From positions 1,736,001-1,800,000 of the forward strand of contig CATNEN010000032.1 of NCBI GenBank assembly GCA_950097015.1: a stretch of DNA of 64,000 nt. The letters are read 5' to 3'. This DNA comes from Macrostomum hystrix. Its lineage: Eukaryota; Animalia; Platyhelminthes. Each line of letters starts with the position of its first letter. Position 1 is the stretch's first letter. The notes below the pieces were generated by a model that was not told the DNA's origin, did no database searches, and saw only the letters and a list, made by a program, of their open reading frames with translations. Position numbers and translations under genes: made by a program. Positions 36,149 to 60,831 of the stretch are shown in pieces.

Positions 36149-39100
36149 TCACTCGTCGCCGACGTCCCCGCTGCTTCCACCGTTGCCTTCGTCGATGCCA
36201 CCGCCGCCGGCCTGCTGCTGGAAGCCGGTGCGGATGGCCCAGGCCGGGGTGCCTGGCGGCACCAGCCGGGAGCTGCGCGCCCCCACATCGCGCCGGCACT
36301 TCTCCAGCTGGACTCGCTGCTTGACCGTGGCGAAGCGGCGCAAAAAGTTGGTGTCTAGCGCGGCCTTGATCTCGCGCACCCGGTCTGACTCCCAGACCAG
36401 CTGCCGGACGCGCAGATTCTCAGATTCGTCTTCCTCATCTGAGGAGGTCATGTCGCGGGTCAGCACCAGGCGGTACTGATCGAGATCGTCCGGCGACAGG
36501 CCAGACAGGAGCGACTCAAACGCCTTCTGTCTGCGGCTCAGCTTCTGCAGGATGGCGAAGGATTGCGGCGAGCTGCTTACTTGATACTTCCAATATCTAC
36601 TCTCCACTCTGATCCCATTCTCCTCTGATCTATTACATTCTCCCGTGATCTATTACACTCTCCCATGATCTATTACATTCTTCCCTGATCTATTACATTC
36701 TCCCATGATCTATTACATTCTTCCCTGATCTATTACATTCTCCCATGATCTATTATATTCTTCCCTGATCTATTACACTCTCCCATGATCTATTACATTC
36801 TTCCCTGATCTATTATTACATTCTCCCTATGATCTATTAAATTCTATCCTGACCTATCCCATTCTATCCTGACCTATCCCATTCTCGCCTAATATATCAT
36901 ATTCTCAGACTCTCACCTACCCTATGCTTCCCCAATCTATATTTTTCTGCCAGATGTTTTGCTTCTAAATTATTAAATAAAGTAATTTTTATTTTTATAC
37001 GTCACATAATACTTCATCAAAGGCCACGCCTTTAAAAAGTTCATAAAAAAGGAAATTCTTAATCTCTATCGCTAATATAAGAAGTTGTTTCGGATTGAAA
37101 AAGCCCAGGTCAATGTAGAACAGTCTCCAATGTTCAGTTAGTAATCTTACACTGTTCCTTCGCAGATACTTCCTGGAATCCTTGCGCCAATTTAACAGCG
37201 TAGTGAAAACACACTTTCGCAGCTCGCCTTCGATCAAGTATCAAGGATTAAGCGGAAAAACATGTCGCGTTAATAACGCTATTCTTTCAACAGAAAAACT
37301 GAAGATTCTACACTTTCACTGAGATTGAAGTATGCCAGGTTGTTTTTTTGCCAATTCCGCTAAACAGAAGCACGGCTTAATCAAGCAGTATTCAAATGTT
37401 TAACTGAACACAAAGTGAAATACCTGTTTGAGCTTGTTGCACCTAGCAGCTGACCTGCGCCTAATGCCAATCCATTTGGTTTCGTTGATAAAATTGTAAC
37501 GACATGCGCCTAGCGTTAATTGTTTGGTTAAAAACACAATAGTGTGAACAATAATGCCGCTGTTCTGTTCTGCATTACACTGACATCTTAAGCCATTGTT
37601 CTAAACGAATTAATGAAGGCTGCAAGCTGCTGCTTTGACGCATTAGAAATTTAGTCTAAACTCAATCACATACCCCATTCCTGCGCTTATACTTTCGACT
37701 GTTGTTCACCCACGAGGCCAGCAGCTTCTTAGTTGAATAGTACAGATTGGAGGCCATGACTGGACAAGTTTTTTAGTAGAGACTGCTAATTAAAGTTCGC
37801 CCGAGAAAACACAATTTAGTTAAAGCATACCTGGCCGAGTGTGAAGGTCTACTTTCATTGCACTTACTCCAAACAGGAAATTGTAGCAAAGCTCAACGGT
37901 ATCGTTGTCTAGGTGGCCACTATTATCAATGGGTCACTCTCTTATCAGCTAGCTACTAATCATTAATGGGTCACTCTCTTATCAGCTAGCCACACATTAT
38001 CAATGGGTCACTCTCTTATCAGCTAGCCACTCATTATCAATGGGTCACTCTCTTATCAGCTAGCCACTCATTATCAATGGGTCACTCTCTTAAGAGGCTA
38101 GCCACTCATCATCAATGGGTCACTCTCTTATCAGCTAGCCACACATTATCAATGGGTCACTCTCTTATCAGCTAGCCACTCATTATCAATGGGTCACTCT
38201 CTTATCAGCTAGCCACACATAATCAATGGTTCACTCTCTTATCAGCTAGCCACTCATCATCAATGGGTCACTCTCTTATCAGCTAGCCACTCATCATCAA
38301 TGGGTCACTCTCTTATCAGCTAGCCACTCATCATCAATGGGTCACTCTCTTATCAGCTAGCCACTCATTATCAATGGGTCACTCTCTTATCAGCTAGCCA
38401 CACATTATCAATGGGTCACTCTCTTATCAGCTAGCCACTAATCATCAATGGGTCACTCTCTTATCAGCTAGCCACTCATCATCAATGGGTCACTCTCTTA
38501 TCAGCTAGCCACTCATCATCAATGGGTCACTCTCTTATCAGCTAGCCACTCATTATCAATGGGTCACTCTCTTATCAGCTAGCCACACATTATCAATGGG
38601 TCACTCTCTTATCAGCTAGCCACTAATCATCAATGGGTCACTCTCTTATCAGCTAGCCACTCATCATCAATGGGTCACTCTCTTATCAGCTAGCCACTCA
38701 TCATCAATGGGTCACTCTCTTATCAGCTAGCCACTCATCATCAATGGGTCACTCTCTTATCAGCTAGCCACTCATTATCAATGGGTCACTCTCTTATCAG
38801 CTAGCCACACATTATCAATGGGTCACTCTCTTATCAGCTAGCCACTCATCAGCAATGGGTCACTCTCTTATCAGCTAGCCGCTAATCATCAATGGGTCAC
38901 TCTCTTATCAGCTAGCCACTAATCAGCAATGGGTCACTCTCTTATCAGCTAGCCACTCATCATCAATGGGTCACTCTCTTATCAGCTAGCCACTCATCAG
39001 CAATGGGTCACTCTCTTATCAGCTAGCCGCTAATCATCAATGGGTCACTCTCTTATCAGCTAGCCACTAATCAGCAATGGGTCACTCTCTTATCAGCTAG

Positions 39101-44199: not shown

Positions 44200-44910
44200 C
44201 CTGTCATTATCTACCGATTTGAATTACCCAATCTGTCATTATCTACCGATTTGAGTTACCCAATCTGTCATTATCTACCGATTTGAGTTACCCAATCTGT
44301 CATTATCTACCGATTTGAGTTACCCAATCTGTCATTATCTACCGATTTGAGTTACCCAATCTGTCATTATCTACCGATTTGAGTTACCCAATCTGTCATT
44401 ATCTACCGATTTGAGTTACCCAATCTGTCATTATCTACCGATTTGAATTACCCAATCTGTCATTATCTACCGATTTGAGCTACCCAATCTGTCATTATCT
44501 ACTGATTTGAATTACCCAATCTGTCATTATCTACCGATTTGAGTTACCCAATCTGTCATTATCTACCGATTTGAATTACCCAATCTGTCATTATCTACTG
44601 ATTTGAGTTACCCAATCTGTCATTATCTACCGATTTGAGCTACCTAATCTGTCATTATCTACTGATTTGAATTACCCAATCTGTCATTATCTACCGATTT
44701 GAGTTACCCAATCTGTCATTATCTACCGATTTGAGTTACCCAATCTGTCTTTGTCTACTGATTTGAATTACCCAATCTGTCATTATCTACCGATTTGAGC
44801 TACCTAATCTGTCATTATCTACTGATTTGAATTACCCAATCTGTCTTTGTCTACTGATTTGAATTACCCAATCTGTCTTTGTCTACTGATTTGAATTACC
44901 CAATCTGTCA
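44200..44910. repeat. 32-bp minisatellite (CTGTCATTATCTACCGATTTGAGTTACCCAAT)n
   Basis: About 22 units. Confidence 0.95.
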
Positions 44911-45034
44911 TTAAAAATAGTAAAATGACAAATAATTGGAGCAAGAACATACACATGAAATAAAACAAGTGGCAGCGTGGATTTTAAGGACAGCAGCTGC
45001 TGGTAGCTTCAGGGCGGTGACAGTCAAAAAGCTT

Positions 45035-48000
45035 TTACCAAGAGCCTTCTCCACTGCCGGGCATCGATTGTTGCTGATTGGCAGCCGCGCCAGCAGCAGC
45101 AGCAGCAGCGGCGGCGGCCGGCGTCCAGATTGGGTCCCTGGCCCAGGGCACGCACTCTGGCGGCGGCGGCCGCTCCGACTGGCAGGCCGGGTGTCGCTGG
45201 AGGCGAAGGAGCTCGGCTCGCTGCCTCTCGTCGGCAAGGCGTTCGACGAACACGGAGTCCAGGCGCTGCTTCATCCGGCGCAGCTCGTCGCTCTCCCAGG
45301 ACAGGCAGCGAACTCTGGCGGCCTCGGTCGAGTCTAAGTCAGCGCCGGCCTCTTCATCCGAGCTGGTGTAGTCTCTAGTGAGCACACTCTGATAGCGAGC
45401 TCTGGTGGACTCGTCTAGGTCATCTTTGATTGCTTCAAAGCTTTTCTGTCGTCGGTTGAGCTTCTGTTTTGATGTGGCGAGGCGGCAAGTGAACAGAATT
45501 GTGAGTCAATGTTCAGCTGGAAAGATAGATGTCTCGAGAGTACTAGAAAAGGTAAGCATAAGCTATCAGAATGTCTGGGAGATACTAAAGCGACCAGAAT
45601 AGCTGGGAGAGAAATTGAAGCTACCAGAACATTTGGATGATAGATAATATAGAAAATCTAGCTCGTAGCTAATAGAATGTCTTGGAGACACTGAAGCTAC
45701 CAGAGTGTCTTGGAGAGACTGAAGCTACCAGAATGTCTTGGAGACACTGAAGATACCAGAGTGTCTGGGAGACACTGAAGCTACCAGAGTGTCTTGAAGA
45801 GACTGAAGCTACCAGAATGTCTTGGAGACACTGAAGCTACCAGAGCGTCTTGGAGACACTGAAGCTACCAGAATGTCTGGGAGACACTGAAGCTACCAGA
45901 ATGTCTGGGAGACACTGAAGCTACCTGATGTCTTGGAGATATTGAAGCTACCAGAATGTCTGGGAGACACTGAAGCTACCAGAATGTCTGGGAGACACTG
46001 AAGCTACCAGAATGTCTGGGAGACACTGAAGCTACCTGATGTCTTGGAGATATTGAAGCTACCAGAATGTCTGGGAGACACTGAAGCTACCAGAATGTCT
46101 GGGAGACACTGAAGCTACCAGAATGTCTGGGAGACACTGAAGCTACCTGATGTCTTGGAGATATTGAAGCTACCAGAATGTCTGGGAGACACTGAAGCTA
46201 CCAGAATGTCTGGGAGACACTGAAGCTACCAGAATGTCTGGGAGACACTGAAGCTACCAGAATGTCTGGGAGACACTGAAGCTACCAGAATGTCTGGGAG
46301 ACACTGAAGCTACCAGAATGTCTGGGAGACACTGAAGCTACCAGAATGTCTGGGAGACACTGAAGCTACCTGATGTCTTGGAGATATTGAAGCTACCAGA
46401 ATGTCTGGGAGACACTGAAGCTACCAGAATGTCTGGGAGACACTGAAGCTACCAGAATGTCTTGGAGATATTGAAGCTACCAGAATAATGTCTGGGAGAG
46501 AAATTGAAGCTAGTAGAATGTGTGGGGCAGCTCAAATGCCTGTCTGGGTGTCAGTGACCGCGTTACTCACAGTCTGAATGAGTATCATTGAGTTAAACTT
46601 ATTCTTTCTAGACTTGGCAACAAAGTCCCGTCTGAGACGCTGGGTGTACCAGTTGCGCAAGTACTTCACTGACAAAACTGAAAACGGTACAGTGACAGCC
46701 AATGGCAAGGCTAGCTAAACACGTCAATCTTACAATAAAATATTTCAGTTAATCACGATCGAGAGCGACGTTGCAGACCCATGGCGATAGTCTTAACCAA
46801 AGTGTAAGGCAACATTTTCTTTTTTTCTTCTTTGCTTTATTTTGTTATAAAGGCGGAATGCATTCGCGGAAGTGTCTGCTGATGGCGTGTGCTCATTGGG
46901 GTGGGTCTGTTGATGGCGTGTGCTCATTGGGGTGGGTCTGCTGATGGCGTGTGCTCATTGGGGTGGGTCTGTTGATGGCGGGTGTACATCGAGGTGGGAT
47001 CTGTTGATGGCGTGTGTACATCGAGGTGGGATCTGTTGATGGCGTGTGTACAGTGGGGTGGGATCTGTTGATGGCGGGTGTACATTGGGGAGGGATCTAT
47101 TGATGGCGGGTGTACAGTGGGGTGGGATCTGTTGATGGTGGGTGTACATTGGGGAGGGATCTGTTGATGGCGGGAGTACAGTGGGGTGGGATCTGTTGAT
47201 GGCGGGTGTACATCGGGGTGGGATCTGTTGATGGCGGGTGTTCATCGGGGTGGGATCTGTTGATGGCGGGTGTACATCTGGGAGGGATCTGTTGATGGCG
47301 GGTGTACATCGGGGTGGGATCTGTTGATGGCGGGTGTTCATCGGGGTGGGATCTGTTGATGGCGGGTGTACATTGGGGTGGGATCTGTTGATGGCGGGTG
47401 TTCATTGGGGTGGAGTCATTGGAAAGCAGGGTGTACACTCGGGTGGGTCTGTTGATGGCGGGTGTACATCTGGGAGGGATCTGTTGATGGCGGGTGTTCA
47501 TTCGGGTGGAGTCATTGGAAAGCAGGGTGTACACTCGGGTGGGTCTGTTGATGGCGGGTGTACATCTGGGAGGGATCTGTTGATGGCGGGTGTTCATTGG
47601 GGTGGGATCTGTTGATGGCGGGTGTTCATTGGGGTGGAGTCATTGGAAAGCAGGGTGTACACTCGGGTGGGTCTGTTGATGGCGGGTGTACATCTGGGAG
47701 GGATCTGTTGATGGCGGGTGTTCATTGGGGTGGAGTCATTGGAAAGCAGGGTGTACACTCGGGTGGGTCTGTTGATGGCGGGTGTACATTGGGGTGGATT
47801 CAGTTGAAGGCAGGGTTGTACACTGCGAATAATACATGTTTACATCAGAAATAAAGCACTCACGGACTGAACGAAAATCAATGAATTGAGCCTATTTTGT
47901 CTGGCTTTGGATTGGAAATCGCGCTTTAGATTTTGGCTGTACCAATTGCGCATGTACTTTCCAGCATTTGCTGAAACAAGTGTGACAAAATAATCTCTTC

Positions 48001-51000
48001 GCTGCTTGCCTGACTCTGTATGAGGTGGGCAGCTTTAAAAATAACAGTGTGCGGCCCATCGCAAAGGAGTTTTAAGCAAAAATAATGGTGTGCATTGAAA
48101 TTTCACCAGGTCAGAAGAAATGTAATTTAGGAATGATGAGCTTTTAGAACTAATAAATGAAGCTATATCGCTCAATGTTGGTGATTAAAGCCAGCCCTTA
48201 AGATGAGCTAGCGCTGAACTTTAAGTAGACTTACAAACTGGGCAGAGATCAGTGAGTTAATTTTAGTCTGCTTGGCTTTCGCATTGAATTCGCGTTTAAG
48301 ATACTGGCCGTAGTAGCGCACATACTTCATTGAGACTTCTGAAAGTAACATGCTTGAGTGCTACAAAAACTCCGCTATACATACATGGAGCCTGAGGGAC
48401 ACATCGCAAAAATGTTTAAACAGCTGGAAGCAAGTTTTTGTTTACTAACCGTGAGATTTAAAGTAGTTACACTAGAAATTCTTCTTTTTTAGGAATTATT
48501 TTTTAACTTTTGTACTTTTTAACTCCTGTGTGTGCACCTCTGTGTACAACTCCAATAGAGTGAGGATGAATACAGACTGAGTGTACATTTTCAGTGGAGT
48601 GAGGTTGGATGCAGACTGACTGTACACTTTCAGTGGAGTGAGGTTGGATGCAGACTGAGTGTACACTTTCAGTGGAGTGAGGTTGGATGCAGACTGAGTG
48701 TACACTTTCAGCAGAGTGAGGTTGGATGCAGACTGAGTGCACACTTTCAGTGGAGTGAGGTTGGATGCAGACTGAGTGTACACTTTCAGTGGAGTGAGGT
48801 TGGCTGCAGACTGAGTGTACACTTTCAGTGGAGTGAGGTTGGATGCAGACTGAGTGTACACTTTCAGTGGAGTGAGGTTGGATGCAGACTGAGTGTACAC
48901 TTTCAGTGGAGTGAGGTTGGATGCAGACTGAGTGTACACTTTCAGTGGAGTGAGGTTGGATGCAGACTGAGTGTACACTTTCAGTGGAGTGAGGTTGGCT
49001 GCAGACTGAGTGTACACTTTCAGCAGAGTGAGGTTGGATGCAGACTGAGTGTACACTTTTAGCAGAGTGAGGTTGGATGCAGACTGAGTGTACACTTTCA
49101 GTGGAGTGAGGTTGGATGCAGACTGAGTGTACACTTTTAGCAGAGTGAGGTTGGATGCAGACTGAGTGTACACTTTCAGTGGAGTGAGGTTTGCTGCAGA
49201 CTGAGTGTACACTTTCAGCAGAGTGAGGTTGGATGCAGACTGAGTGTACACTTTCAGTGGAGTGAGGTTTGCTGCAGACTGAGTGTACACTTTCAGCAGA
49301 GTGAGGTTGGATGCAGACTGAGTGTACACTTTTAGCAGAGTGAGGTTGGATGCAGACTGAGTGTACACTTTCAGTGGAGTGAGGTTTGCTGCAGACTGAG
49401 TGTACACTTTTAGCAGAGTGAGGTTGGCTGCAGACTGAGTGTACACTTTCTGTGGAGTGAGGTTGGCTGCAGACTGAGTGTACACTTTCAGTGGAGTGAG
49501 GTTGGCTGCAGACTGAGTGTACACTTTCAGTGGAGTGAGGTTGGATGCAGACTGAGTGTACACTTTCAGTGGAGTGAGGTTGGATGCAGACTGAGTGTAC
49601 ACTTTCAGTGGAGTGAGGTTGGATGCAGACTGAGTGTACACTTTCAGTGGAGTGAGGTTGGCTGCAGACTGAGTGTACACTTTCAGTGGAGTGAGGTTGG
49701 ATGCAGACTGAGTGTACACTTTCAGTGGAGTGAGGTTGGATGCAGACTGAGTGTACACTTTCTGTGGAGTGAGGTTGGCTGCAGACTGAGTGTACACTTT
49801 CAGTGGAGTGAGGTTGGATGCAGACTGAGTGTACACTTTTAGCAGAGTGAGGTTGGATGCAGACTGAGTGTACACTTTCTGTGGAGTGAGGTTGGATGCA
49901 GACTGAGTGTACACTTTCAGTGGAGTGAGGTTGGCTGCAGACTGAGTGTACACTTTCAGTGGAGTGAGGTTGGATCCAGACTGAGTGTACACTTTCAGCG
50001 GAGTGAATTGGAATACAGACTGAGTGCACATTTTTAATGGAGTGCCAATGTATCTGAATGGTATTAGAAGATAAGACGAGCTAGTACTCACAGTCTGTGT
50101 GATAATTAGAGAGTTCAGTTTAGTTCGCTTGGCCTTGTTATTAAAATCGCGCCTAAGATACTGGCGATACCAGCTGCGCAAATATTTAGCGCTATTAACT
50201 GAAAGCAAATAACTATAATTGAAATTTTTTCAAAAGAACCTCTATAATCTGAACGGCGCAGAGGAACTCATCGCAAAATATCAGTCACGATAATATCAGT
50301 AAGTACAGTAAGTGTGCATCTAGACTGAATGCTATTACGTCGTTGTGACAGTTCGTTAGAAATGCGTAATTTCGCGGCCTGGTGGAGACTGAGAATAGAG
50401 GGGTTAGTCTGGTTAATCTACACTGGGAGTGAGGGGGTTAGTCTGGCCGATGTACACTGGGAGTAAGGGGGTTAGTCTGGCTGATGTACACTGGGAGTAA
50501 GGGGGTTAGTCTGGCTGATGTACACTAGGAGTGAGGGGGTTAGTCTGGTTAATGTACACTGGGAGTGAGGGGGTTAGTCTGGCTGATGTACACTGGGAGT
50601 AAGGGGGTTAGTCTGGCTGATGTACACTGGGAGTAAGGGGGTTAGTCTGTCTGATGTACACAATGAGCGTGGGAGGTTAGTCTGGCTGATGTACACTGGG
50701 AGTAAGGGGGTTAGTCTGGCTGATGTACACAATGAGCGTGGGAGGTTAGTGTGACTGATGTACACTGGGAGTAAGGGGGTTAGTCTGGCTGATGTACACT
50801 ATGAGCGTGGGAGGTTAGTCTGGCTGATGTACACTATGAGCGTGGGAGGTTAGTCTGGCTGATGTACACTATGAGCGTGGGAGGTTAGTCTGGCTGATGT
50901 ACACTGGGAGTAAGGGGGTTAGTCTGGCTGATGTACACTGGGAGTAAGGGGGTTAGTCTGGCTGATGTACACTATGAGCGTGGGAGGTTAGTCTGGCTGA

Positions 51001-54000
51001 TGTACACTGGGAGTAAGGGGGTTAGTCTGGCTGATGTACACTGGGAGTAAGGGGGTTAGTCTGGCTGATGTACACTAGGAGTGAGGGGGTTAGTCTGGTT
51101 AATGTACACTGGGAGTGAGGGGGTTAGTCTGGCTGATGTACACTGGGAGTAAGGGGGTTAGTCTGGCTGATGTACACTAGGAGTGAGGGGGTTAGTCTGG
51201 TTAATGTACACTGGGAGTGAGGGGGTTAGTCTGGCTGATGTACACTGGGAGTAAGGGGGTTAGTCTGTCTGATGTACACTGGGAGTAAGGGGGTTAGTCT
51301 GGCTTGCTTAAGCGAATCTAGAACGCTCTCATCAGCGGTACAGCACTCACAGTCTGCAAGCTGATCAGTGAGGAAATCTTTGACTGATCGAATTTGGCTC
51401 TGAAGCTACGCTTTAGAAACTGGGTGTACCAGATCCGCAGATATTTAAATGAAGCAGCTAAAAATGGCAAGTTTTGCAGACGTTATTAAAAATAGGAGAA
51501 TAACGGACAAAAAACTTGAGAACTGCGCGGACGAGTTGCAAGGCCAAAGTAGAAAATGCCCCTACATTAACTTACAAGAGTGGCTGAAATGCTAAAGTTT
51601 GGCTTTAGCCGACGCAGATAAGGATAGCGCCAGTTTTTAGAATAGTGCGGCTTCAAATAGCGATGACAGGAGGCTAGAAAGTTGAGCAAAAGCATCATTT
51701 ATAGACTCAACTAGCAATAACACAGAGGGCTGGCCGGATAGCAAAGAGCAACTTTAATTCGGAGAATTTTTCTCCTTGGCAAGTGTGAACCCCAATGTCC
51801 TAGAATTACTAACCATTATTTTTGTAAACAATTTTGCACTATCAGATTTGTAAGACTTGCGCTTGTGATCTCGTTTTAACACGCTGTCAAAGTAGATTCT
51901 AAAGTAGAGCGTCATCATTCCTATGCAATTATTCAGATTAGAATGCAATGTGCAATTCATACTACTGCACAAAGTAGAGGTTCATTAAAACAAATGCAAG
52001 CTAGCAAAGGAGTTGCAGTGGCTTTCTCGCATTAACTCAAAACATTTCTTACTATGATTAACTAACAGCATACAAAGTAAGAAGTTATGAAAATATTGAT
52101 TCAAAATCCTTCGACTTCGTGTCCAACATTTGGTACTGGGGTTTAATTGGTTCTTGGATTTGGTACTGGTGCTTAATTGGTACTTAAATTTGGTACTGGG
52201 ATTTGATTATTGTGGTTCGCTACTAAGGTTATGTACCAATCCTTTTTTATTTGGTACTGGGGTTTAATTGGTTCTTGGATTTGGTACTGGTGCTTAATTG
52301 GTACTTAAATTTGGTACTGGGATTTGATTATTGTGGTTCGCTACTAAGGTTATGTACCAATCCTTTTTTATTTGGTACTGGGGTTTAATTGGTTCTTGGA
52401 TTTGGTACTGGTGCTAATTGGTACTTAAATTTGGTACTGGGATTTGATTATTGTGGTTCGCTACTAAGGTTATGTACCAATCCTTTTTTATTTGGTACTG
52501 GGGTTTAATTGGTTCTTGGATTTGGTACTGGTGCTAATTGGTACTTAAATTTGGTACTGGGATTTGATTATTGTGGTTCGCTACTAAGGTTATGTACCAA
52601 TCCTTTTTTATTTGGTACTGGGGTTTAATTTGTTCTTGGATTTGGTACTGGTGCTAATTGGTACTTAAATTTGGTACTGGGATTTGATTATTGTGGTTCG
52701 CTACTAAGGTTATGTACCAATCCTTTTTTATTTGGTACTGGGGTTTAATTTGTTCTTGGATTTGGTACTGGTGCTAATTGGTACTTAAATTTGGTACTGG
52801 GATTTGATTATTGTGGTTCGCTACTAAGGTTATGTACCAATCCTTTTTTATTTGGTACTGGGGTTTAATTGGTTCTTGAATTTGGTACTGGTGCTTAATT
52901 GGTACTTAAATTTGGTACTGGGATTTGATTATTGTGGTTCGCTACTAAGGTTCTGTACCAATCCTTTTTTATTTGGTACTGGGGTTTAATTTGTTCTTGG
53001 ATTTGGTACTGGTGCTAATTGGTACTTAAATTTGGTACTGGGATTTGATTATTGTGGTTCGCTACTAAGGTTATGTACCAATCCTTTTTTATTTGGTACT
53101 GGGGTTTAATTGGTTCTTGAATTTGGTACTGGTGCTTAATTGGTACTTAAATTTGGTACTGGGATTTGATTATTGTGGTTCGCTACTAAGGTTCTGTACC
53201 AATCCTTTTTATTTGGTACTGGGGTTTAATTGGTTCTTGGATTTGGTACTGGTGCTTAATTGGTACTTAAATTTGGTACTGGGATTTGATTATTGTGGTT
53301 CGCTACTAAGATTATGTACCAATCCTTTTTTATTTGGTACTGGGGTTTTGAAACTGGAGATTTTGGTACAAGGACATTGGTATTTGGTCTTGGTCTTGAT
53401 ACTAGGATTTAGTACAGGGAGAATCTTAGAGATTCGGTACAGTATGATTTTATTTTAGTACTCTGGTAATTAGATTTTGCACTATAATTTAGGTATACTA
53501 GGTCTCCGTTACAAGAAGGTTTCGGGTGCAGAATTTTAAATCTAGTGCTTAAAATCAGAAAAAATGAGTATGATAGCACAAGAGTAAACATACAGACAGG
53601 AATCTCTGATTTACCCGCATCTGCTGCAACAGTTTGGCATTGCCATCCTTGACAACTTTTAAGTTGTTATCTCGTTTTAATACGCTGTAGAAGTAAATCT
53701 TAAAGTAGCGATCCATCTTAGCTGATAATTTTAAGGATTTATTAGAAGATAGAAAAAAACTGCGTTTTAGCTATTTGCTGGCGGGTATGGCATTTCTAAG
53801 AGAGTCTGATTTCAGAGAGTGCTGCAGTGGCTATCATAAATGTCATCCATTTTTTGAAGCATAAACCACACACTTAAGAACAAAAGTCTAGAAAAGGATA
53901 GTTAATCGAGGCATGTGGTGAGCTTCTTACCAGATTACTGGTGACAATTCTGGCCATCCTAGCAGCATCCTCGAACTTTTTATTAGTAGGCTTCAGGGTG

Positions 54001-55743
54001 GACTTGTAGTAGATGCTCAGGTAGTGCTTCATGGCACTGTCTGTGCGCATAAGGCCGATAGTTTTGTCAAGCAACATGTCAAGGCACTCACAATGCGCCT
54101 AATATTCCACTAACTTCAGCCGCTTTCAGGCGAAATTGTGTCAAAAAGTCCTATTTTTTTCTATATAAATTTTAACAGAGCGAACACGCTAATTAGTTGA
54201 TTAAATATCATATTTGGCAGGTTTTCTCAGCTTTCAACCGCATCAGAAGGGCAGCTGAATGTCAGTTATGATCGCTCATTGATTTAAAAAAGCAGACTTA
54301 AAAAATTGGTATCGATAAACACAATAGAAATCCCGCCTGAAGCCACACTGAATTAAATAAATTTAAATTAAAGCTGCGAGCGATCAGCTAACCAACCGGT
54401 GCTTTATTAACTTTAACCTAGGCGAATGTGTAAAAACAATTTAGTGACATCTTTGCGATGGCCCTGCAACGCCCTCTGATAACAAATAACCTTAAATGAC
54501 TAATGAATAGTGCGACAATTAACTCCTCCTTTCGGAGGACTTTTCTGCTTTTATAAAATAGCAGATAATTGATCTTGAAAAATTGGGATTAAACTCACTG
54601 CGCCACGCTTCGACATTGGCTGGTCTCTGCCGGCCCAGCGACAGGGCCTTGTCAATCACCCTATTGGCTGCCAGAACGTTGGCTCTGGCTGAATACGGGA
54701 GGGCGAAGTCGAACACATTGCTCCCAGTTTCTTCTTTTAGCACCCGGTAGGCGCGTCGAAGGATTCCCTTCCATTCGTTGGACAGTTCGGAGGAGCTGCC
54801 TTCCTCGGCGCCGCCGCTGACGCCAGCACCAGAGGAGCGACCACCGGCGCCAGGCTGTCTGTTCGAGAACATGGACGAGTTTCCTGAGCCGGACTGGTCA
54901 AACATAATATCCGTCTCCATTAGAACGCAATCGTCGTCCGAGTCGTTTATTGTGGCCTCTAATTTCATAGCTGCCGCTGCTGACGATGCTGACGCCGAAG
55001 CGTTTGAGGACTGCTGCTGTTGGTGCTTTTCAGATTTCTCTGACTTAGAGGCCGGAGTGTGCTGGTGATGATCAGCGAAGGCCGGCGGAGGCGGTGGGCA
55101 CTTTAAATGAAACATGAAAGAGAGTCAGATCAGCTTAGCTTAGACGCAGTCAGATCACATTAGATAAGGAATCTAATCCCATTGGATAAGGAATCTAATC
55201 CCATTGGATAAGGAATCTAATACCATTTGATAAGGAATCTAATCCCATTGGATAAGGAATCTAATCCCATTAGATAAGGAGTCTAATCCCATTAGATAAG
55301 GAATCTAATCCCATTAGATAAGGAATCTAATCCCATTAGATAAGAAATATAATCCCATTAGATAAGGAATCTAATCCCATAAGATAAGGAATCTAATCCG
55401 ATTAGATAAGGAATCTAATCCCATTAGATAAGGAATCTAATCCCATTAGATAAGCAATCTAATCCCATTAGATAAGGAATCAGGTTCTACTCATCGAGCT
55501 CACCATGGCGTGCTCGTCAGCGACGCTCGCCAGTCGTTGCACGGCGGGATCCAGGACATCCATGAGGTGACCGTGCAGCTGAGCCACAATACGAAAGGCC
55601 ATGAGGAGATCTCTGACAGCCATATTGTCTATGAGCATAGTGGCACTGGAGATGGTGCACTCAAACATGGTCAGCGGTGAGAAGGTGCCGGCGCCGCTTG
55701 CAGACCCGAGCTGCGACGGCATGGAGAAAGCGGTGGACGCCAT
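45035..55743 (-). CDS. Paralogue B, C14orf93-like: exon 1 55743-55504, exon 2 55100-54599, [one of 9 cassette exons], last exon 45463-45035
   Basis: ATG|gtgagc to ttaaag|TGC (phase 0); exon 2 ends TGG CGC A|gtgagt (phase 1); last exon aaacag|AAG CTC AAC (phase 0) KLNRRQK..YTSSDEE..WES..LD..SERPPP..PWA; homologous to A and C. Confidence 0.85.
45680..46490. repeat. 28-bp minisatellite (CTGAAGCTACCAGAATGTCTGGGAGACA)n between B9 and the last exon
   Basis: Directly visible. Confidence 0.93.
46571..46677 (-). CDS. Cassette exon B9 (107 nt): ILSVKYLRNWYTQRLRRDFVAKSRKNKFNSMILIQT
   Basis: ttttcag|TT...ACT|gtgagt; 3n+2; homologous to B5-B8. Confidence 0.85.
46758..46790 (-). promoter_or_regulatory. 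Selector sequence for B9
   Basis: Plus strand ATCGAGAGCGACGTTGCAGACCCATGGCGATAG resembles the docking transcript ATCAGAGGGCGTTGCAGGGCCATCGCAAAG, so it is complementary to it in the pre-mRNA. Confidence 0.75.
46875..47810. repeat. 32-bp minisatellite between B8 and B9
   Basis: (GGGGTGGGATCTGTTGATGGCGGGTGTACATT)n with variants. Confidence 0.92.
47864..47970 (-). CDS. Cassette exon B8 (107 nt): TNAGKYMRNWYSQNLKRDFQSKARQNRLNSLIFVQS
   Basis: gtttcag|CA...TCC|gtgagt; 3n+2. Confidence 0.85.
48053..48066 (-). promoter_or_regulatory. Selector sequence for B8
   Basis: Plus strand GGCCCATCGCAAAG vs docking GGGCCATCGCAAAG. Confidence 0.7.
48235..48338 (-). CDS. Cassette exon B7 (104 nt): KVSMKYVRYYGQYLKREFNAKAKQTKINSLISAQF
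   Basis: ctttcag|AA...TTT|gtaagt; 3n+2. Confidence 0.85.
48392..48411 (-). promoter_or_regulatory. Selector sequence for B7
   Basis: Plus strand CTGAGGGACACATCGCAAAA matches both ends of the docking site. Confidence 0.65.
48560..50030. repeat. 39-bp minisatellite between B6 and B7
   Basis: About 37 units (GAGTGAGGTTGGATGCAGACTGAGTGTACACTTTCAGTG). Confidence 0.95.
50092..50198 (-). CDS. Cassette exon B6 (107 nt): INSAKYLRSWYRQYLRRDFNNKAKRTKLNSLIITQT
   Basis: gctttcag|TT...ACT|gtgagt; 3n+2. Confidence 0.85.
50259..50278 (-). promoter_or_regulatory. Selector sequence for B6
   Basis: Plus strand CAGAGGAACTCATCGCAAAA matches both ends of the docking site. Confidence 0.65.
50400..51302. repeat. 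34-bp minisatellite between B5 and B6
   Basis: (GGGGGTTAGTCTGGCTGATGTACACTGGGAGTAA)n with variants. Confidence 0.93.
51351..51457 (-). CDS. Cassette exon B5 (107 nt): TASFKYLRIWYTQFLKRSFRAKFDQSKISSLISLQT
   Basis: tttttag|CT...ACT|gtgagt; 3n+2. Confidence 0.85.
51535..51546 (-). promoter_or_regulatory. Selector sequence for B5
   Basis: Plus strand GTTGCAAGGCCA vs docking GTTGCAGGGCCA (12 bp with one G-U pair). Confidence 0.62.
51576..51673 (-). CDS. Cassette exon B4 (98 nt): TSCHRYLKPHYSKNWRYPYLRRLKPNFSISATL
   Basis: tttctag|CC...CTT|gtaagt; 3n+2; RYL..Y motif; more divergent. Confidence 0.65.
51723..51746 (-). promoter_or_regulatory. Selector sequence for B4
   Basis: Plus strand CAGAGGGC...ATAGCAAAG matches both ends of the docking site. 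Confidence 0.6.
51814..51920 (-). CDS. Cassette exon B3 (107 nt): RMMTLYFRIYFDSVLKRDHKRKSYKSDSAKLFTKIM
   Basis: tgcatag|GA...ATG|gttagt; 3n+2; close to B2. Confidence 0.8.
52012..52022 (-). promoter_or_regulatory. Selector sequence for B3 (short)
   Basis: Plus strand GTTGCAGTGGC vs docking GTTGCAGGGC. Confidence 0.45.
52125..53350. repeat. ~120-bp composite tandem repeat (about 10 units, internal TTTGGTACTGG subrepeats) between B2 and B3
   Basis: Sequence lines recur every 120 nt (52381, 52501, 52621, 52741). Confidence 0.93.
53615..53721 (-). CDS. Cassette exon B2 (107 nt): TKMDRYFKIYFYSVLKRDNNLKVVKDGNAKLLQQMR
   Basis: ttatcag|CT...CGG|gtaaat; 3n+2. Confidence 0.8.
53812..53840 (-). promoter_or_regulatory. 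Selector sequence for B2
   Basis: Plus strand TCAGAGAGTGCTGCAGTGGCTATCATAAA; in the pre-mRNA pairs along nearly the whole docking site (3 G-U, 3 mismatches, 1 bulge). Confidence 0.75.
53931..54040 (-). CDS. Cassette exon B1 (110 nt): NSAMKHYLSIYYKSTLKPTNKKFEDAARMARIVTSNL
   Basis: gcacag|AC...CTG|gtaaga; 3n+2; shares YL..YY/WY..TLKPT with the single exon of paralogue C. Confidence 0.82.
54451..54480 (-). promoter_or_regulatory. Docking site for mutually exclusive splicing of paralogue B (pre-mRNA AUCAGAGGGCGUUGCAGGGCCAUCGCAAAG)
   Basis: About 120 nt downstream of the exon 2 donor; complementary to sequences 50-120 nt upstream of B2-B9. Confidence 0.78.
55160..55480. repeat. 22-bp minisatellite in intron 1 of paralogue B (GATAAGGAATCTAATCCCATTA)n
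   Basis: About 14 units. Confidence 0.93.
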
Positions 55744-56949
55744 AGGGTGATGCTGGTGCAACGATCAACTGTTTCGATTCGGATAGGTTGATTAGGGTGC
55801 AATAAAGAGAGGCGACCTGTTTCTGCAAAAAGACGGATTGGGAATAATTGTAGGAAATGTAGCTTGTGCTTTGCTAACCGACACGTTTTTTATTAAACCT
55901 AACCAATTTTCCAATTTTCGTCTCTACCGATCATCGTTCCTCATGACCTTTCATGTCTCTTTATATCACCTTTCCCATCTTCTCGTAACCTTTTCCCTAT
56001 CCCTATCACCTTTCTCGTCTTTCCACGACTATTTCTCTCTGAACAGAAAAAACTGGCCAAAGCAAACATGCCTTAATAAGGTTACAACCGACAAGTGTTT
56101 ATTAGGCATTCAGGTGAACAATTTTAACAGCTGACGAGACGAACAAGCCAGCAAAGATGCACAGCAACTGCTAATAATCCTAAGTTTCAACAAACAATGC
56201 ATGGAAGCAGTGAAAGGTTGCAAATATACAAATGATATTAATAATAAGTTTACTATTGCTCTCATTAAAAAGGACGAGCTGTTAGACACACGCAATTGTT
56301 AGAAACATTGTTAGACAGGCAGAATCTGTGCAAAAAAAAGACTTGATATTCACATGTTCATAAGCAAATATGAAATAAATTTTACTTAAACAATTAAATA
56401 AATAGATTTAAGAAAAAGCTAGCATGCAGTATAATTCCTTGATTACTCATAAAAGCAGCAAATTAGTAATGAAAATCACAGGTGCTAATGGTATGTTCAA
56501 TAAAAAAACAGATAAATAAGTTGTTCTTGTAAGTCACTTTTTTATACATACAAAAAACTAAAAGTGTTGCTTTGAGTAAAATGAAATAGCATTAAAATAA
56601 GTTAATTAAACAACTCTGCAATATTATATTAGTGACCGCAAGGAAAACATTACATCAATTAATAAATTAATAAAAAGCGAAAACACGACAATACAGGCAA
56701 TTCAATTGTGAAGAAAAAATTAATTTTCAATAAAAACATCAGCCGAAGAAGAGATAATGATTAAAAAAATTATAATTTTTGTACGAAATCGTGTTTGGTA
56801 ACATGCAGACATGATTTTTTACTAGAAATTTAAACTCAAACAATCATTTATTTACACCATTTTATACAACAGAACAGTAAGAAATTAAGCCAAAATGCAA
56901 CACCCTTGCTGGAGCCCTATGAATGGGCGATAATAGTACATAAGACTGA

Positions 56950-57740: not shown

Positions 57741-60700
57741 TCAATGATCAACCGTCGCAGACGCCTCCGTCTCTTCGATCATCATCTCTTCGTCTTCCTC
57801 AGCTTCCTTCTCTTCCGCATCCTCATCCGCGCCATCTTTATGATCATCTTTGTCGAGTCCGGTGTCGTCGTCGTTCCAAGTTGCCATGGAGTCCGCCGCG
57901 ACAGCCGCCACCACTGGGGCGTCCAGCACGCCGACAGTCTTGTCGACGGCCCAGTCTGGGGCGTCAGCGGGCGGCCGCCTGCTGCTGACATAGCCCGGAT
58001 GCCGCCGCACCCTGGCCAGCTCCTGCTTCTCCCTGTCATTGGCCAGCTCTTCGGCGAAGTGGTCGTCCAGTGTTGACTTCAGCCTGGCCGACTCGACCGT
58101 CTCCCAGGGCAGCAGTTTGACGTAGAGGCAACCGTCCGGCTCCTCTTCGTCAGAGCTGACCAGGTCCCGCTCCAGCAGGGCTGCCATGCGATCTCCGGTG
58201 GCCGGAGACAGCCGGTTCAGGGTCAGCAGGCTTTGCAGACTTTGGCGACGCTGGTTCAGTTTCTGGAGAAAGGTCGTTTGAAAAGTATCGCATGGCCTTC
58301 GTACAGTATCTGAGTGCGTGGCTTAAACTGACTCTTTGCTGGCTGCGTATCATAGGCTAACAGAGCAAGGGCTACGGAAGAAAACGAGGAAGGGGATCAA
58401 AAAGTCGATGAGAGGTACAGGAAATAGGCAAAAACTGAAAGGTATCCAAAGTCATTAAAATATATTTAATTTACACTATAAAGAGAAGTGTACAAATGGG
58501 TTGTAGCCTAATGGTTAGAGCGTCGGACTTACGACTAGAAGGTCGGGGGTTCGAGTCGCGTCTACACAGGAACAGTTTGTGTCCTTTAGCAAGATACTTA
58601 ACTCTTGTTAAATGGGTGCCAGCATTAGCTGGGGCAATTGAGGGTGGGTGTGGCGTCCCCCAGTCCATGGACTGAACAGCCGTACGCAGCCTTCAAAAGC
58701 GCCGGCTGCACATCTCACCCAATTTGGGCAGGTGTAGTCAATTAGTATTATTAATTATTACCCTATAAAACTGGCAATTATTCAGTATGTAGAACACACA
58801 AATAGATCCAAACCTTGTCCATGGACATCTGGACGCGACAGGCGGACTTGCAATGAGTCGGCTTCAAAGTCTTCCTGTACCACTGCTCCAGATAGCGCGT
58901 AAACAAGTCTGGCAATAGTGACAAGAGGCACTAGAATATATAAACATAAAAGCATGACAATTTATAAGAGAAGATACAAAAGGCCTGACATAGCACACTC
59001 ACTCTTCCATGACTTTACATCCGGTGTAGGCTTAGCGCTCATAGCCACAGCTCTACTGATGATAATTTCGGCAGAGGCGCGATTCTCATGGGCCGAATAG
59101 CTGCGATTAGAGAAGGATTAAAAGAAAATGTTAGACACCTTCGTATGATCCCGTTAAGCAACAACGGGTACAGAGCTTTCTAACACCAACTAGTAGGTCT
59201 TCTAAATTACACTTGATTGGTCTTCTAAATTACACTTGATTGGTCTTCTAAATTACACTTGATTGGTCTTCTAAATGACACCTAATTGGTCTTCCAAATT
59301 ACACTTGATTGGTCTTCCAAATTACACTTGATTGGTCTTCTAAATTACACTTGATTGGTCTTCTAAATTACACTTGATTGGTCTTCTAAATTACACTTGA
59401 TTGGTCTTCTAAATTACACTTGATTGGTCTTCTAAATTACACTTGATTGGTCTTCTAAATTACACTTGATTGGTCTTCTAAATTACACTTGATTGGTCTT
59501 CTAAATTACACTTGATTGGTCTTCTAAATTACACTTAATTGGTCTTCTAAATTACACCCAATTGGTCTTCTAAATGACACCTAATTGGTCTTCTAAATTA
59601 CACTTGATTGGTCTTCTAAATTACACCCAATTGGTCTTCTAAATGACACCTAATTGGTCTTCCAAATTACACTTGATTGGTCTTCCAAATTACACTTGAT
59701 TGGTCTTCTAAATGTCACCTAATTGGTCTTCTAAATTACACTTAATTGGTCTTCTAAATTACACTCGATTGGCCTTCTAAATGACACCTAATTGGTCTTC
59801 TAAATTACACTTAATTGGTCTTCTAAATGTCACCTAATTGGTCTTCTAAATAACACCTAATTGGTCTTCTAAATTACACTTAATTGGTCTTCTAAATGTC
59901 ACCCAATTGGTCTTCTAAATGACACCTAATTGGTCTTCTAAATGTCACCTAATTGGTCTTCTAAATTACACTTAATTGGTCTTCTAAATGACACCTAATT
60001 GGTCTTCTAAATTACACTTAATTGGTCTTCTAAATGTCACCTAATTGGTCCTCTAAATGACACCTTATTGAAGTCCTTATCTAAGATCTATTAGACAGGA
60101 TCTATTAGAGTTATAATTATCACTCACGACTTAGTGAAGTCGAACAGCTGCTGCCCCTCGGACTGCAGGACTCTGTAGGCCTTGCGCAACAGCTGCTTCC
60201 AGCTGTCAGACAAGCCCCTGGTGGCGCTGCTGTCCCTGTTGTTGACCTTGGAGGCGCCCGCAGTTGCAGCAGCAGCCGCAGAAGTAGACTGCCGCCTGGA
60301 GGCCCTAGAAGCAGCACTAGAAGAGGAGCCAGTAGTAGGCTTGGCTTTGTCCGCAACAGTAGCCGTGCCAGTCTTCTCCGTTGCTGTGTTCATCGACAAG
60401 ATACTTCGTCTGGCCTTACTAGTACTACTAATAGTACTATTGTTAGCCGCTAAAGCATCTTCGAAATGTTCATTAGAAATTGATGATCTGCCATTTCTTC
60501 TTTTAGTAATGGGAGGCGGAGGCGGCCGCTGCTGCGGACGAGTCTTGGAGTCTGGCTCCTTGGCTTCAATCTCCTCGGAGTGTCGGCTATAGAGATTAGC
60601 TAAGCGGATCAGCCGGCTAGCCGACGGTTCAACGCACTCCACCAGGCGGCCGTGCAACTGGGAGACAATCCTCAGGGCTAGGACTAGGTCGGCCAGTTCC

Positions 60701-60831
60701 ATGGAGTCCAGCAACAGTTGGGCATTGTGAATACTGCATTCGAATAGAGCTATGGACGAGAACGGGACGCCGGCTGCGGCTGCTGTGGCAGCGTCGGGCA
60801 GAGTTGGCGACTGGCACAGTAAAGTAGCCAT
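57741..60831 (-). CDS. Paralogue C, C14orf93-like: exons 60831-60128, 59100-59003, 58908-58814 (single helix exon), 58262-57741
   Basis: Phases 2, 1, 0 are compatible. LFECSIHNAQLLLDSM domain; WKQLLRKAYRVL..FDFTKSY; NLFTRYLEQWYRKTLKPT; KLNQRRQ..VSSDEE..WET..LD..SSRRPP..PDWA. Confidence 0.82.
58498..58760 (+). mobile_element. tRNA-derived SINE with CORE/Meta-like central segment, in the last intron of paralogue C
   Basis: A box TAGCCTAATGG and B box GGTTCGAGTC, followed by GTGTCCTTTAGCAAGATACTTAAC..AAATGGGTGCCA; AT-rich tail; related copies elsewhere in the window. Confidence 0.75.
59195..60065. repeat. 23-bp minisatellite in intron 1 of paralogue C (AAATTACACTTGATTGGTCTTCT)n
   Basis: About 38 units. 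Confidence 0.94.

What the first reader, a model, noticed from the sequence alone, without database searches (positions are those of the whole stretch)
45035..55743. Dscam-like array of nine mutually exclusive exons in an uncharacterised (C14orf93-like) gene
Seen: between exon 2 (phase-1 donor at 54599) and the last exon (phase-0 acceptor at 45463) lie nine homologous open exons (110, 107, 107, 98, 107, 107, 104, 107 and 107 nt). All have AG/GT ends and all are 3n+2. Including one gives a full-length protein, while skipping all, including two, or including all nine shifts the frame. Most are invisible in the ORF track. They encode variants of one basic/aromatic segment ([K/R/H]Y[L/F/M/V]R.[W/Y]Y...LKR). 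Established: duplicated, equal-phase, frame-incompatible exons are the hallmark of mutually exclusive splicing (Dscam1, Mhc). Inference: one locus makes up to nine isoforms that differ only in this segment. I know no description of such a cluster for this family.
Basis: partly seen in the sequence, partly recalled or inferred. Interest (0 to 1): 0.95.

Follow-up and report, generated by a model that had tools for sequence, protein, structure and literature searches.

The report
Nine-exon mutually exclusive splicing array
A flatworm (Macrostomum) gene distantly related to human C14orf93 carries nine alternative copies of one small exon. RNA data show that at least four are spliced in one at a time, apparently chosen by the same RNA-pairing trick that insects use in Dscam.

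Summary
On the minus strand lie two 5' exons, nine homologous cassettes (110/107/107/98/107/107/104/107/107 nt, all AG/GT, all 3n+2) and one 3' exon. Only single inclusion gives an open frame.

RNA-derived contigs of the same organism join exon 2 to the cassette and the cassette to the last exon for B1, B5, B8 and B9. No cassette-cassette joint was seen. B2, B3, B4, B6 and B7 are not shown spliced.

The M. lignano ortholog keeps six cassettes (B1, B2, B4, B5, B8, B9). Their pN is 0.04-0.24 while synonymous sites are saturated.

A 29-nt docking site sits 123 nt downstream of exon 2. It is complementary to a selector 47-93 nt upstream of each of B2-B9 and is 29/29 identical in M. lignano. It is the only intronic sequence that aligns between the two species. 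A paralogous M. lignano gene shares 16 nt of this site and has its own selectors. This is the Dscam exon-6 layout, so I file it as a new member of a known kind, in a new phylum and gene family.

'C14orf93-like' is supported only at fold level (Foldseek); Pfam gives no match.

Other notes of this scan cover this same stretch (docking site, helix). None covers the same thing on other DNA.

The parts
55504..55743 (-). Exon 1 (starts at the ATG; 240 nt)
   Evidence: The joint 55504/55100 appears in RNA contigs of X3 and X4. It is 82% aa identical to the M. lignano ortholog.
54599..55100 (-). Exon 2 (502 nt), constitutive, phase-1 donor at 54599
   Evidence: RNA joints run from 54599 to B1 and B5. 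Loose ends at the B8 and B9 acceptors equal the last 29-30 nt of E2.
54447..54475 (-). Docking site (29-nt core; conserved block 54482..54447), 123 nt downstream of the exon 2 donor
   Evidence: It is the best 30-nt window in an unbiased scan of intron 2 (mean dG -31 against an intron mean of -14, z -3.6). A shuffled-docking control gave 0/500, z -6.6. It is 29/29 identical in M. lignano L002 at 11542. It is the only intronic blastn match between the species.
53931..54040 (-). Cassette B1 (110 nt)
   Evidence: E2->B1 joint and B1->last-exon loose end in X4. Ortholog in M. lignano, pN 0.17 / pS 0.66. No convincing selector.
53815..53844 (-). Selector of B2
   Evidence: Duplex with the docking site -28 to -38 kcal/mol, 93 nt upstream of the acceptor. 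It aligns to the reverse complement of the docking site.
53615..53721 (-). Cassette B2 (107 nt)
   Evidence: Ortholog in M. lignano. No coverage in X3 or X4.
52006..52032 (-). Selector of B3
   Evidence: -28 to -32 kcal/mol, 85 nt upstream.
51814..51920 (-). Cassette B3 (107 nt), a duplicate of B2 with no M. lignano ortholog
51725..51750 (-). Selector of B4 (the weakest of the eight)
   Evidence: -21 to -29 kcal/mol, 51 nt upstream.
51576..51673 (-). Cassette B4 (98 nt)
   Evidence: 91% aa identical to its M. lignano ortholog, pN 0.04 against pS 0.82. Not seen in X3 or X4.
51528..51560 (-). Selector of B5
   Evidence: -32 to -37 kcal/mol, 70 nt upstream. Its core is kept in the M. lignano b5 selector.
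51351..51457 (-). Cassette B5 (107 nt)
   Evidence: One 982-nt X3 contig runs E1-E2-B5 and 30 nt into the last exon. Also seen in X4. 86% aa identical to its ortholog.
50250..50282 (-). Selector of B6
   Evidence: -28 to -35 kcal/mol, 51 nt upstream.
50092..50198 (-). Cassette B6 (107 nt), lineage-specific copy of the B8/B9 class
   Evidence: No coverage in X3 or X4.
48387..48416 (-). Selector of B7
   Evidence: -34 to -35 kcal/mol, 48 nt upstream.
48235..48338 (-). Cassette B7 (104 nt), lineage-specific copy
   Evidence: Only an unspliced contig (48185-48453) in X6.
48026..48071 (-). Selector of B8 (the core is the 5' 22 nt, 48071..48050)
   Evidence: -34 kcal/mol, 55 nt upstream. Its core is kept in the M. 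lignano b8 selector.
47864..47970 (-). Cassette B8 (107 nt)
   Evidence: Contigs in X4 and X6 carry E2 letters on one side and last-exon letters on the other. Ortholog in M. lignano.
46766..46790 (-). Selector of B9
   Evidence: -30 to -39 kcal/mol, 88 nt upstream.
46571..46677 (-). Cassette B9 (107 nt)
   Evidence: X6 shows both E2->B9 and B9->last exon. X5 shows B9->last exon. Ortholog in M. lignano.
45035..45463 (-). Last exon (429 nt including the stop), phase-0 acceptor at 45463
   Evidence: Its first 30 nt are the loose ends at the donors of B1, B5, B8 and B9. 80% aa identical to its M. lignano ortholog.
46875..51304 (-). Three TGTACA-bearing minisatellites in the introns after B5 (50400-51304), B6 (48558-50044) and B8 (46875-47822). 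Their role is unknown, and whether they belong to the system is uncertain.
   Evidence: 81 of the window's 94 TGTACA hexamers lie here. The M. lignano introns after b5 and b8 carry the same motif in otherwise different repeat units.

Best explanation
This is a cluster of nine tandemly duplicated, mutually exclusive cassette exons in a Macrostomum gene that is a remote, fold-level relative of vertebrate C14orf93. Each mature mRNA carries exon 1, exon 2, one cassette and the last exon. The cassette encodes about 35 residues inside a long, basic and aromatic helix of a conserved domain of unknown function. The inferred mechanism of choice is competing RNA pairing. A single 29-nt docking site in the intron just after exon 2 can pair with only one of the selectors that lie 47-93 nt upstream of B2-B9. 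The pairing loops out the intervening cassettes and brings the exon 2 donor next to the chosen acceptor. B1, the closest cassette, has no good selector and would be the unpaired default. Products with more than one cassette meet a stop codon inside the second cassette, so they are non-productive and would be a likely target of nonsense-mediated decay. How cassettes downstream of the chosen one are skipped is not explained, as is also the case for Dscam exon 6. Shown here: the exon anatomy, single-cassette splicing of four cassettes, purifying selection on six, and complementarity and conservation of the docking site and selectors. Inferred: that the pairing causes the choice, that all nine are used, and what the variable helix does.
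For: - Anatomy and frames.
- Spliced RNA contigs from runs of the same organism as the DNA (organism B): E1-E2; E2->B5->last exon in X3 and X4; E2->B1->last exon in X4; E2->B8->last exon in X4 and X6; E2->B9->last exon in X6; B9->last exon in X5.
- The loose ends were verified as exact E2 and last-exon termini that are unique in the window.
- No cassette-cassette joints.
- M. lignano ortholog L002 has six orthologous cassettes with pN 0.04-0.24 against pS 0.65-0.87, similar to the constant exons.
- M. lignano gene models of one gene differ only in the cassette: P0005/P0007, P0001/P0006, P0002/P0010.
- Docking site: all four TTGCGATG matches in the 64-kb window lie in this gene, three upstream of cassettes and one as the complement in intron 2. 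Unbiased scan. Shuffle control 0/500. Within the gene, strong duplexes fall essentially only upstream of B2-B9. 29/29 nt identity in M. lignano, where the intron is otherwise unalignable.
- Paralog L001 has a docking site that shares 16 nt, with selectors 59-68 nt upstream of its cassettes.
- Helix location: AlphaFold model with pLDDT 90.
Against: - Five of the nine cassettes have no splice evidence. B7 was seen only in an unspliced contig.
- The RNA evidence consists of short Logan contigs at low depth (4-19) from a handful of small runs of unrecorded library type. Such contigs drop rare variants, so rare double inclusion cannot be excluded.
- Duplex energies of B3 and B4 are not extreme against the window's background (90 and 201 of 1407 windows are as low).
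- B1 has no good selector in either species.
- No experiment links the pairing to the choice.
- No downstream docking site or other element explains the skipping of distal cassettes.
Confidence: 0.8

Rival explanations
1. Only a subset is functional. B1, B5, B8 and B9 (perhaps also B2 and B4) are real alternative exons. The lineage-specific copies B3, B6 and B7 are young duplicates that are rarely or never spliced in and will decay.
For: B3, B6 and B7 have no ortholog in M. lignano. X3 and X4 do not cover B3 or B6. B7 appears only unspliced in X6.
Against: All three keep open frames, AG/GT ends, 3n+2 length and a selector. pN is below pS against their nearest paralogs: B2-B3 0.29/0.68, B6-B8 0.24/0.90. 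There are no decayed copies in the array. RNA-type runs X11-X13 hold 0.37-0.50 of the words of the B3-B4 stretch.
Confidence: 0.2
2. The exons are mutually exclusive, but the docking/selector complementarity is a passive by-product of duplicating exon plus flanking intron. Choice and exclusivity would come from protein regulators, splice-site competition and decay of out-of-frame products.
For: The selectors are homologous to one another, as expected from tandem duplication (model in PMC6071210). Multi-cassette products carry stop codons. No functional test exists.
Against: The docking site is not part of the duplicated unit. It is 29/29 identical between species whose synonymous sites are saturated and whose introns otherwise do not align. 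Half of it is kept in a paralog at 56% protein identity, with matching selectors. Orthologous selectors keep the same part of the pairing.
Confidence: 0.1
3. There is no regulated array. The contigs would come from separate paralogous genes or assembly chimeras, and the cassettes would be chance open segments.
For: The contigs are de Bruijn unitigs with only 30-nt flanks. Two paralogs lie in the same window.
Against: The 30-nt flanks match the E2 end and the last-exon start exactly, and each is unique in the window. One 982-nt contig spans E1-E2-B5-last exon. The cassette sequences are 99-100% identical to this locus. The profile E-values for the nine cassettes are 1e-13 to 1e-19.
Confidence: 0.02

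Closest known systems
Dscam1 exon 6 cluster of Drosophila (docking site / selector model; described in PMC6071210 and PMC8791459)
   Same: It has tandem homologous cassettes, with one docking site in the intron directly downstream of the upstream constitutive exon. One selector lies upstream of each variant, and all selectors overlap on the same docking sequence. The docking site is more conserved than the exons. The skipping of downstream variants is unexplained.
   Different: Nine variants here rather than 48. The protein is unrelated (no Ig domains). The cassettes are 3n+2, so the frame also enforces single inclusion. The phylum is Platyhelminthes. The first cassette lacks a selector. No repressor or balancer structures have been identified.
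Other clusters with competing RNA structures: 14-3-3 xi, Mhc, MRP1, Dscam exons 4 and 9, srp, Branchiostoma MRP, human DNM1, CD55, ATE1 (listed in PMC8791459 and PMC6071210)
   Same: Mutually exclusive choice among duplicated exons goes with intronic complementarity to a shared site.
   Different: In most of these the docking site is downstream of the cluster (PMC6071210). Here it is upstream, and a scan for a downstream site found nothing. Most of these clusters have 2-8 exons.
Vertebrate C14orf93 (RTFC / 4931414P19Rik; Pfam DUF4616)
   Same: It is the top Foldseek match of the modelled C-terminal domain (E 1.4e-3 to 1.8e-3, probability 1.00, 225-233 aligned residues, C14orf93 residues about 291-505). 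An amphioxus entry named 'C14orf93-like' is among the AFDB cluster hits. A DUF4616 cluster appears among the ESM feature look-alikes.
   Different: There is no Pfam DUF4616 match for this protein or for 17 relatives. Identity is 12-14% and TM only 0.39. I found no report of a cassette array in C14orf93.

Membership tests
Tandem-duplicated mutually exclusive exon (MXE) cluster | Neighbouring homologous exons of similar length with the same phases and intact splice sites | tested here: met
   Nine cassettes of 98-110 nt, all AG/GT and 3n+2, between a phase-1 donor and a phase-0 acceptor.
Tandem-duplicated mutually exclusive exon (MXE) cluster | Exactly one exon of the cluster in the mature mRNA | tested here: inconclusive
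   Met for B1, B5, B8 and B9, with E2->Bx->last exon in contigs and no cassette-cassette joints. Not shown for B2, B3, B4, B6 or B7. Contigs cannot exclude rare double inclusion.
Tandem-duplicated mutually exclusive exon (MXE) cluster | Individual variants kept by selection | tested here: met
   Six one-to-one orthologs in M. lignano with pN 0.04-0.24 against pS 0.65-0.87.
Docking site / selector competing RNA structures (Dscam exon 6 type) | A single conserved intronic docking site next to the flanking constitutive exon | tested here: met
   54475..54447, 123 nt after the E2 donor. Unique optimum of an unbiased scan. 29/29 identical in M. lignano. 16 nt shared with a paralog.
Docking site / selector competing RNA structures (Dscam exon 6 type) | A selector complementary to the docking site upstream of every variant | tested here: inconclusive
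   Present 47-93 nt upstream of B2-B9 (shuffle control 0/500). Weak for B4. Absent or weak for B1 in both species.
Docking site / selector competing RNA structures (Dscam exon 6 type) | Selectors overlap on the docking site, so that only one pairing can form | tested here: met
   All eight selectors align to the same 33-nt reverse complement of the docking site.
Docking site / selector competing RNA structures (Dscam exon 6 type) | Exon choice depends on the pairing (disruptive and compensatory mutations) | not testable with these tools
   This needs minigenes or transgenic animals.
C14orf93 / Pfam DUF4616 (PF15394) | Match to the Pfam model | tested here: not met
   No Pfam family at E <= 0.1 for the isoform with B9. 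None at 0.01 for ten relatives. No DUF4616 at E <= 10 for eight relatives.
C14orf93 / Pfam DUF4616 (PF15394) | Same fold as C14orf93 over the conserved C-terminal domain | tested here: inconclusive
   Mouse and human C14orf93 are the top two Swiss-Prot hits (E about 1e-3, probability 1.00), and the next hit has E 0.18. However, TM is 0.39 and both sides are predictions. An amphioxus 'C14orf93-like' entry scores 1.1e-4.
Dscam (Ig-superfamily receptor) | Ig and fibronectin III domains, transmembrane receptor | tested here: not met
   No Pfam domains. The model is helical with two short strands. 'Dscam-like' applies to the splicing architecture only.

The most novel reading that the evidence does not exclude
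The array is one instance of an old, family-wide system in Macrostomum. The cassette classes keep the same order (B1-type, B2/B3-type, B5-B9-type), and a related docking site is shared by paralogs at 56% identity. On this reading the conserved TGTACA minisatellites downstream of B5-class cassettes would be the platform for the unknown factor that silences cassettes distal to the chosen one. Cassette choice would differ between body regions or cells, as hinted by different cassettes in different runs. That would give a code of alternative basic helices in a conserved but uncharacterised metazoan domain.
Probability: 0.15. Interest if true: 0.85.

Novelty: new member of a known kind. Interest (0 to 1): 0.68.

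Why it matters
Clusters of mutually exclusive exons driven by a docking site and selectors are documented mainly in arthropods, with a few cases in amphioxus and human (PMC8791459). The upstream-docking layout is described for Dscam exon 6, and in the other genes the docking site lies downstream of the cluster (PMC6071210). My literature searches found no report from flatworms.

This locus is an independent nine-way example in Platyhelminthes. The docking site is perfectly conserved between species and is also shared by a paralogous gene. To my knowledge M. lignano can be made transgenic, so the pairing model, and the open question of how distal variants are silenced, could be tested in a small, simple array.

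It also gives a first functional handle on the C14orf93-like domain. Evolution has singled out one helix of that domain for diversification.

Tried and rejected
- Pfam scans of the isoform and of relatives found no family, and no DUF4616 even at E 10.
- A word-based search with the amphioxus relative found only amphioxus proteins and no C14orf93 name.
- Foldseek against the PDB gave nothing below E 1.8.
- X1 and X2 (organism A) held only parts of exons 1 and 2.
- A scan for a downstream docking site in the last intron, against sequences downstream of each cassette, stayed at background (z -1.6).
- Gene A's intron gave no convincing docking site (z -1.9).
- The exact docking core with up to 4 mismatches is absent from L001. 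An unbiased scan of that locus then found the related half-site.
- ARAGORN found no tRNA in the tRNA-like stretch of gene C's intron.
- Steric hindrance was rejected as the cause of exclusivity, because the introns between cassettes are 118-1753 nt.
Full report
**Observation**

I read the minus strand of 45000-55800 and cut out the exons by their boundary sequences.
- E1 is 55743..55504 and E2 is 55100..54599. Together they are 742 nt, so the E2 donor is phase 1.
- The nine cassettes are 110, 107, 107, 98, 107, 107, 104, 107 and 107 nt. All have AG/GT ends and all are 3n+2.
- The last exon is 45463..45035.

Each single inclusion gives an open protein of 423-427 aa. Skipping all cassettes, or including 2, 4 or 9, meets a stop within about 10-65 codons after exon 2, because a second cassette is read out of frame. 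A profile of the cassette peptides finds exactly nine segments between exon 2 and the last exon (i-E 2e-13 to 4e-19) and no decayed extra copies.

The cassettes fall into classes: B1; B2/B3 (62% nt identity); B4; and B5-B9 (55-62%).

**Organism and gene family**

The best protein matches are uncharacterised Macrostomum lignano proteins at 56-66% identity. The window therefore comes from another Macrostomum species.

The window holds three tandem paralogs on the minus strand.
- Gene C has a single 95-nt 3n+2 exon at the equivalent position (58908..58814).
- The second is the gene studied here.
- Gene A has three 3n+2 cassettes of 86, 86 and 77 nt.
The M. lignano locus L002 has the same three-gene order.

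Pfam finds nothing. A profile search finds 441 relatives. Those whose source I looked up come from a hemichordate, a sea star, amphioxus and a mussel. They share the C-terminal half of the protein, including the cassette region with an invariant Tyr.

An AlphaFold model of the C-terminal domain of the M. lignano paralog P0001 is confident (pLDDT 90, pTM 0.77). The cassette corresponds to residues 80-115, which lie wholly inside a 56-residue helix (75-130).

The best reviewed matches by Foldseek are mouse and human C14orf93 (E about 1e-3, probability 1.00, 225-233 aligned residues). The next hit is at E 0.18. An amphioxus 'C14orf93-like' entry and many cnidarian and fungal proteins appear among the AFDB clusters. 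Nothing in the PDB matches. So 'C14orf93-like' is a reasonable remote, fold-level assignment, but not a demonstrated family membership.

**RNA evidence**

Runs X3-X6 belong to the same organism label as the DNA run that probably gave the assembly. Their contigs are spliced, so they derive from RNA.

On 49750-55749:
- A joint E1/E2.
- A joint 54599->51457 (E2->B5) in X3 and X4. In X3 one 982-nt contig runs E1-E2-B5 and 30 nt further.
- A joint 54599->54040 (E2->B1) in X4.
- Loose ends at the donors of B5 and B1.

On 46527-48557:
- Contigs of B8 in X4 and X6, and of B9 in X6, carry loose ends on both sides. B9 in X5 has one on the donor side.

I checked that these loose ends are exactly the last 29-30 nt of E2 and the first 24-30 nt of the last exon, and that each sequence is unique in the window.

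So E2->Bx->last exon is shown for B1, B5, B8 and B9. No joint between two cassettes was reported, even though B7, B8 and B9, or B1-B6, lay on one stretch.

What is not shown:
- B7 was seen only in an unspliced 272-nt contig of X6.
- B2, B3, B4 and B6 had no coverage in X3 or X4.
- Further runs of the same study hold 0.37-0.50 of the words of the B3-B4 stretch. That fits exon-only presence, but I could not lay them.

Different runs show different cassettes: X3 shows B5; X4 shows B1, B5 and B8; X5 shows B9; X6 shows B8 and B9. This hints at sample-specific usage, but contig depth is not a measure of expression.

**Conservation**

The M. lignano ortholog (L002, 10001-16548) has six cassettes that pair one-to-one with B1, B2, B4, B5, B8 and B9. 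Between the two species pS is 0.65-0.87 (saturated) while pN is 0.04-0.24. The constant exons give pN 0.12-0.14. Each of these six cassettes is therefore kept as coding sequence.

B3, B6 and B7 are lineage-specific duplicates with intact features and pN below pS against their nearest paralogs.

M. lignano gene models of one gene differ only in the cassette: P0005/P0007, P0001/P0006 and P0002/P0010.

In the paralog P0001 (L001) the five cassettes follow the same class order: two B1-type, then one B2/B3-type, then one of unclear class, then one B5-B9-type. The array is therefore older than that gene duplication.

**Mechanism**

- All four TTGCGATG matches in the 64-kb window lie in this gene. 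Three are upstream of B6, B7 and B8, and one is the complement in intron 2.
- A 29-nt core at 54475..54447, 123 nt after the E2 donor, forms predicted duplexes of -21 to -39 kcal/mol with a site 47-93 nt upstream of the acceptor of each of B2-B9.
- A scan along the gene finds strong duplexes essentially only at those eight places.
- An unbiased scan of all 30-nt windows of intron 2 picks the same site (mean -31 against -14, z -3.6).
- Shuffling the docking letters never reaches the observed mean (0/500, z -6.6).
- All eight selectors align to the same 33-nt reverse complement of the docking site, so only one can pair at a time.

The core is 29/29 identical in M. lignano. The 36-nt block around it (94% identity) is the only intronic sequence that blastn aligns between the two loci, and it is better conserved than any exon. 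M. lignano has selectors upstream of b2, b5, b8 and b9, and orthologous selectors keep the same part of the pairing.

In the paralog L001, the best window of an unbiased scan shares 16 nt with this docking site. Selectors lie 59-68 nt upstream of its cassettes c2-c5.

This is the layout described for Dscam exon 6: docking site downstream of the constitutive exon, selectors upstream of each variant (PMC6071210). Most other known clusters have a downstream docking site.

Two parts of the mechanism remain open. B1 has no convincing selector in either species. I found no downstream docking site, so the skipping of distal cassettes is unexplained.

**A possible lead on the open part**

81 of the window's 94 TGTACA hexamers lie in the minisatellites of the introns after B5, B6 and B8. 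The M. lignano introns after b5 and b8 also carry tandem repeats that keep TGTACA in otherwise different units. Whether these are binding arrays or only an old repeat family is untested.

**Comparison and novelty**

The kind is known. Competing RNA structures are reported for Dscam1 exons 4, 6 and 9, 14-3-3 xi, Mhc, MRP1, srp, RIC-3, Branchiostoma MRP, and human DNM1, CD55 and ATE1 (PMC8791459, PMC6071210, PMC7797038).

Full-text searches found no report for Macrostomum or any other flatworm, nor for C14orf93. I therefore file it as a new member of a known kind: a new phylum, a new gene family, and the upstream-docking layout otherwise described for Dscam exon 6.

What the variable helix does is inference only. 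It is basic and aromatic and lies in a conserved domain with no solved relative. A change of binding partner, whether nucleic acid or protein, is plausible but untested. The scan's note that it is a DNA-recognition helix (s1-273999) has no support beyond the fact that it is a helix.

**Verdict**

Four of the nine cassettes are shown spliced, six are under purifying selection, and eight have selectors. Confidence is 0.8 and interest 0.68.

Noticed in passing
window 36150-40612 (minus strand), cassettes 37759..37674, 37509..37424, 37227..37151: Paralog 'gene A' has its own three candidate cassettes (86, 86 and 77 nt, all AG/GT and 3n+2) between a donor at 39434 and the last exon at 36544. An unbiased scan found no convincing docking site (z -1.9). 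No RNA test was done.
   Followed up: partly
window 57830-60830 (minus strand), exon 58908..58814: Paralog 'gene C' has a single 95-nt 3n+2 exon (B1-like, motif TLKPT) at the position of the array. This is probably the unduplicated state. Its downstream intron (about 58530-58610) looks tRNA-derived, but ARAGORN calls no tRNA.
   Followed up: partly
window 50400-51304, 48558-50044, 46875-47822; L002 13465-13820, 14352-15163: Minisatellites downstream of B5, B6 and B8 (and of b5 and b8 in M. lignano) all keep a TGTACA motif while the rest of the unit differs. 81 of the window's 94 TGTACA hexamers lie here. The array after B5 also has 27 ACTAAC motifs, which resemble a branch point.
   Followed up: partly
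window 55154-55481, 52128-53348, 45667-46526, 44201-44913, 37950-39140, 59200-60080: Most long introns of all three paralogs (but not gene C's last intron), and the spacer after the gene, hold a different high-copy tandem repeat (units of 22-120 nt). Short RNA-run contigs match some of these repeats, perhaps from other loci or from unspliced RNA.
   Followed up: no
runs X3-X6 on window 46527-55749: Different runs of one study show different cassettes: X3 shows B5; X4 shows B1, B5 and B8; X5 shows B9; X6 shows B8 and B9. This may reflect sample-specific or body-region-specific choice, or only low depth.
   Followed up: no
L001 11936-13792 (M. lignano NIVC01000020.1): The P0001 gene has five cassettes in the same class order as the window's array, a docking site at 11456-11490 that shares 16 nt with the window's, and selectors 59-68 nt upstream of cassettes c2-c5. 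The deposited models P0003 and P0006 are mis-spliced: one skips all cassettes and the other reads through several.
   Followed up: partly
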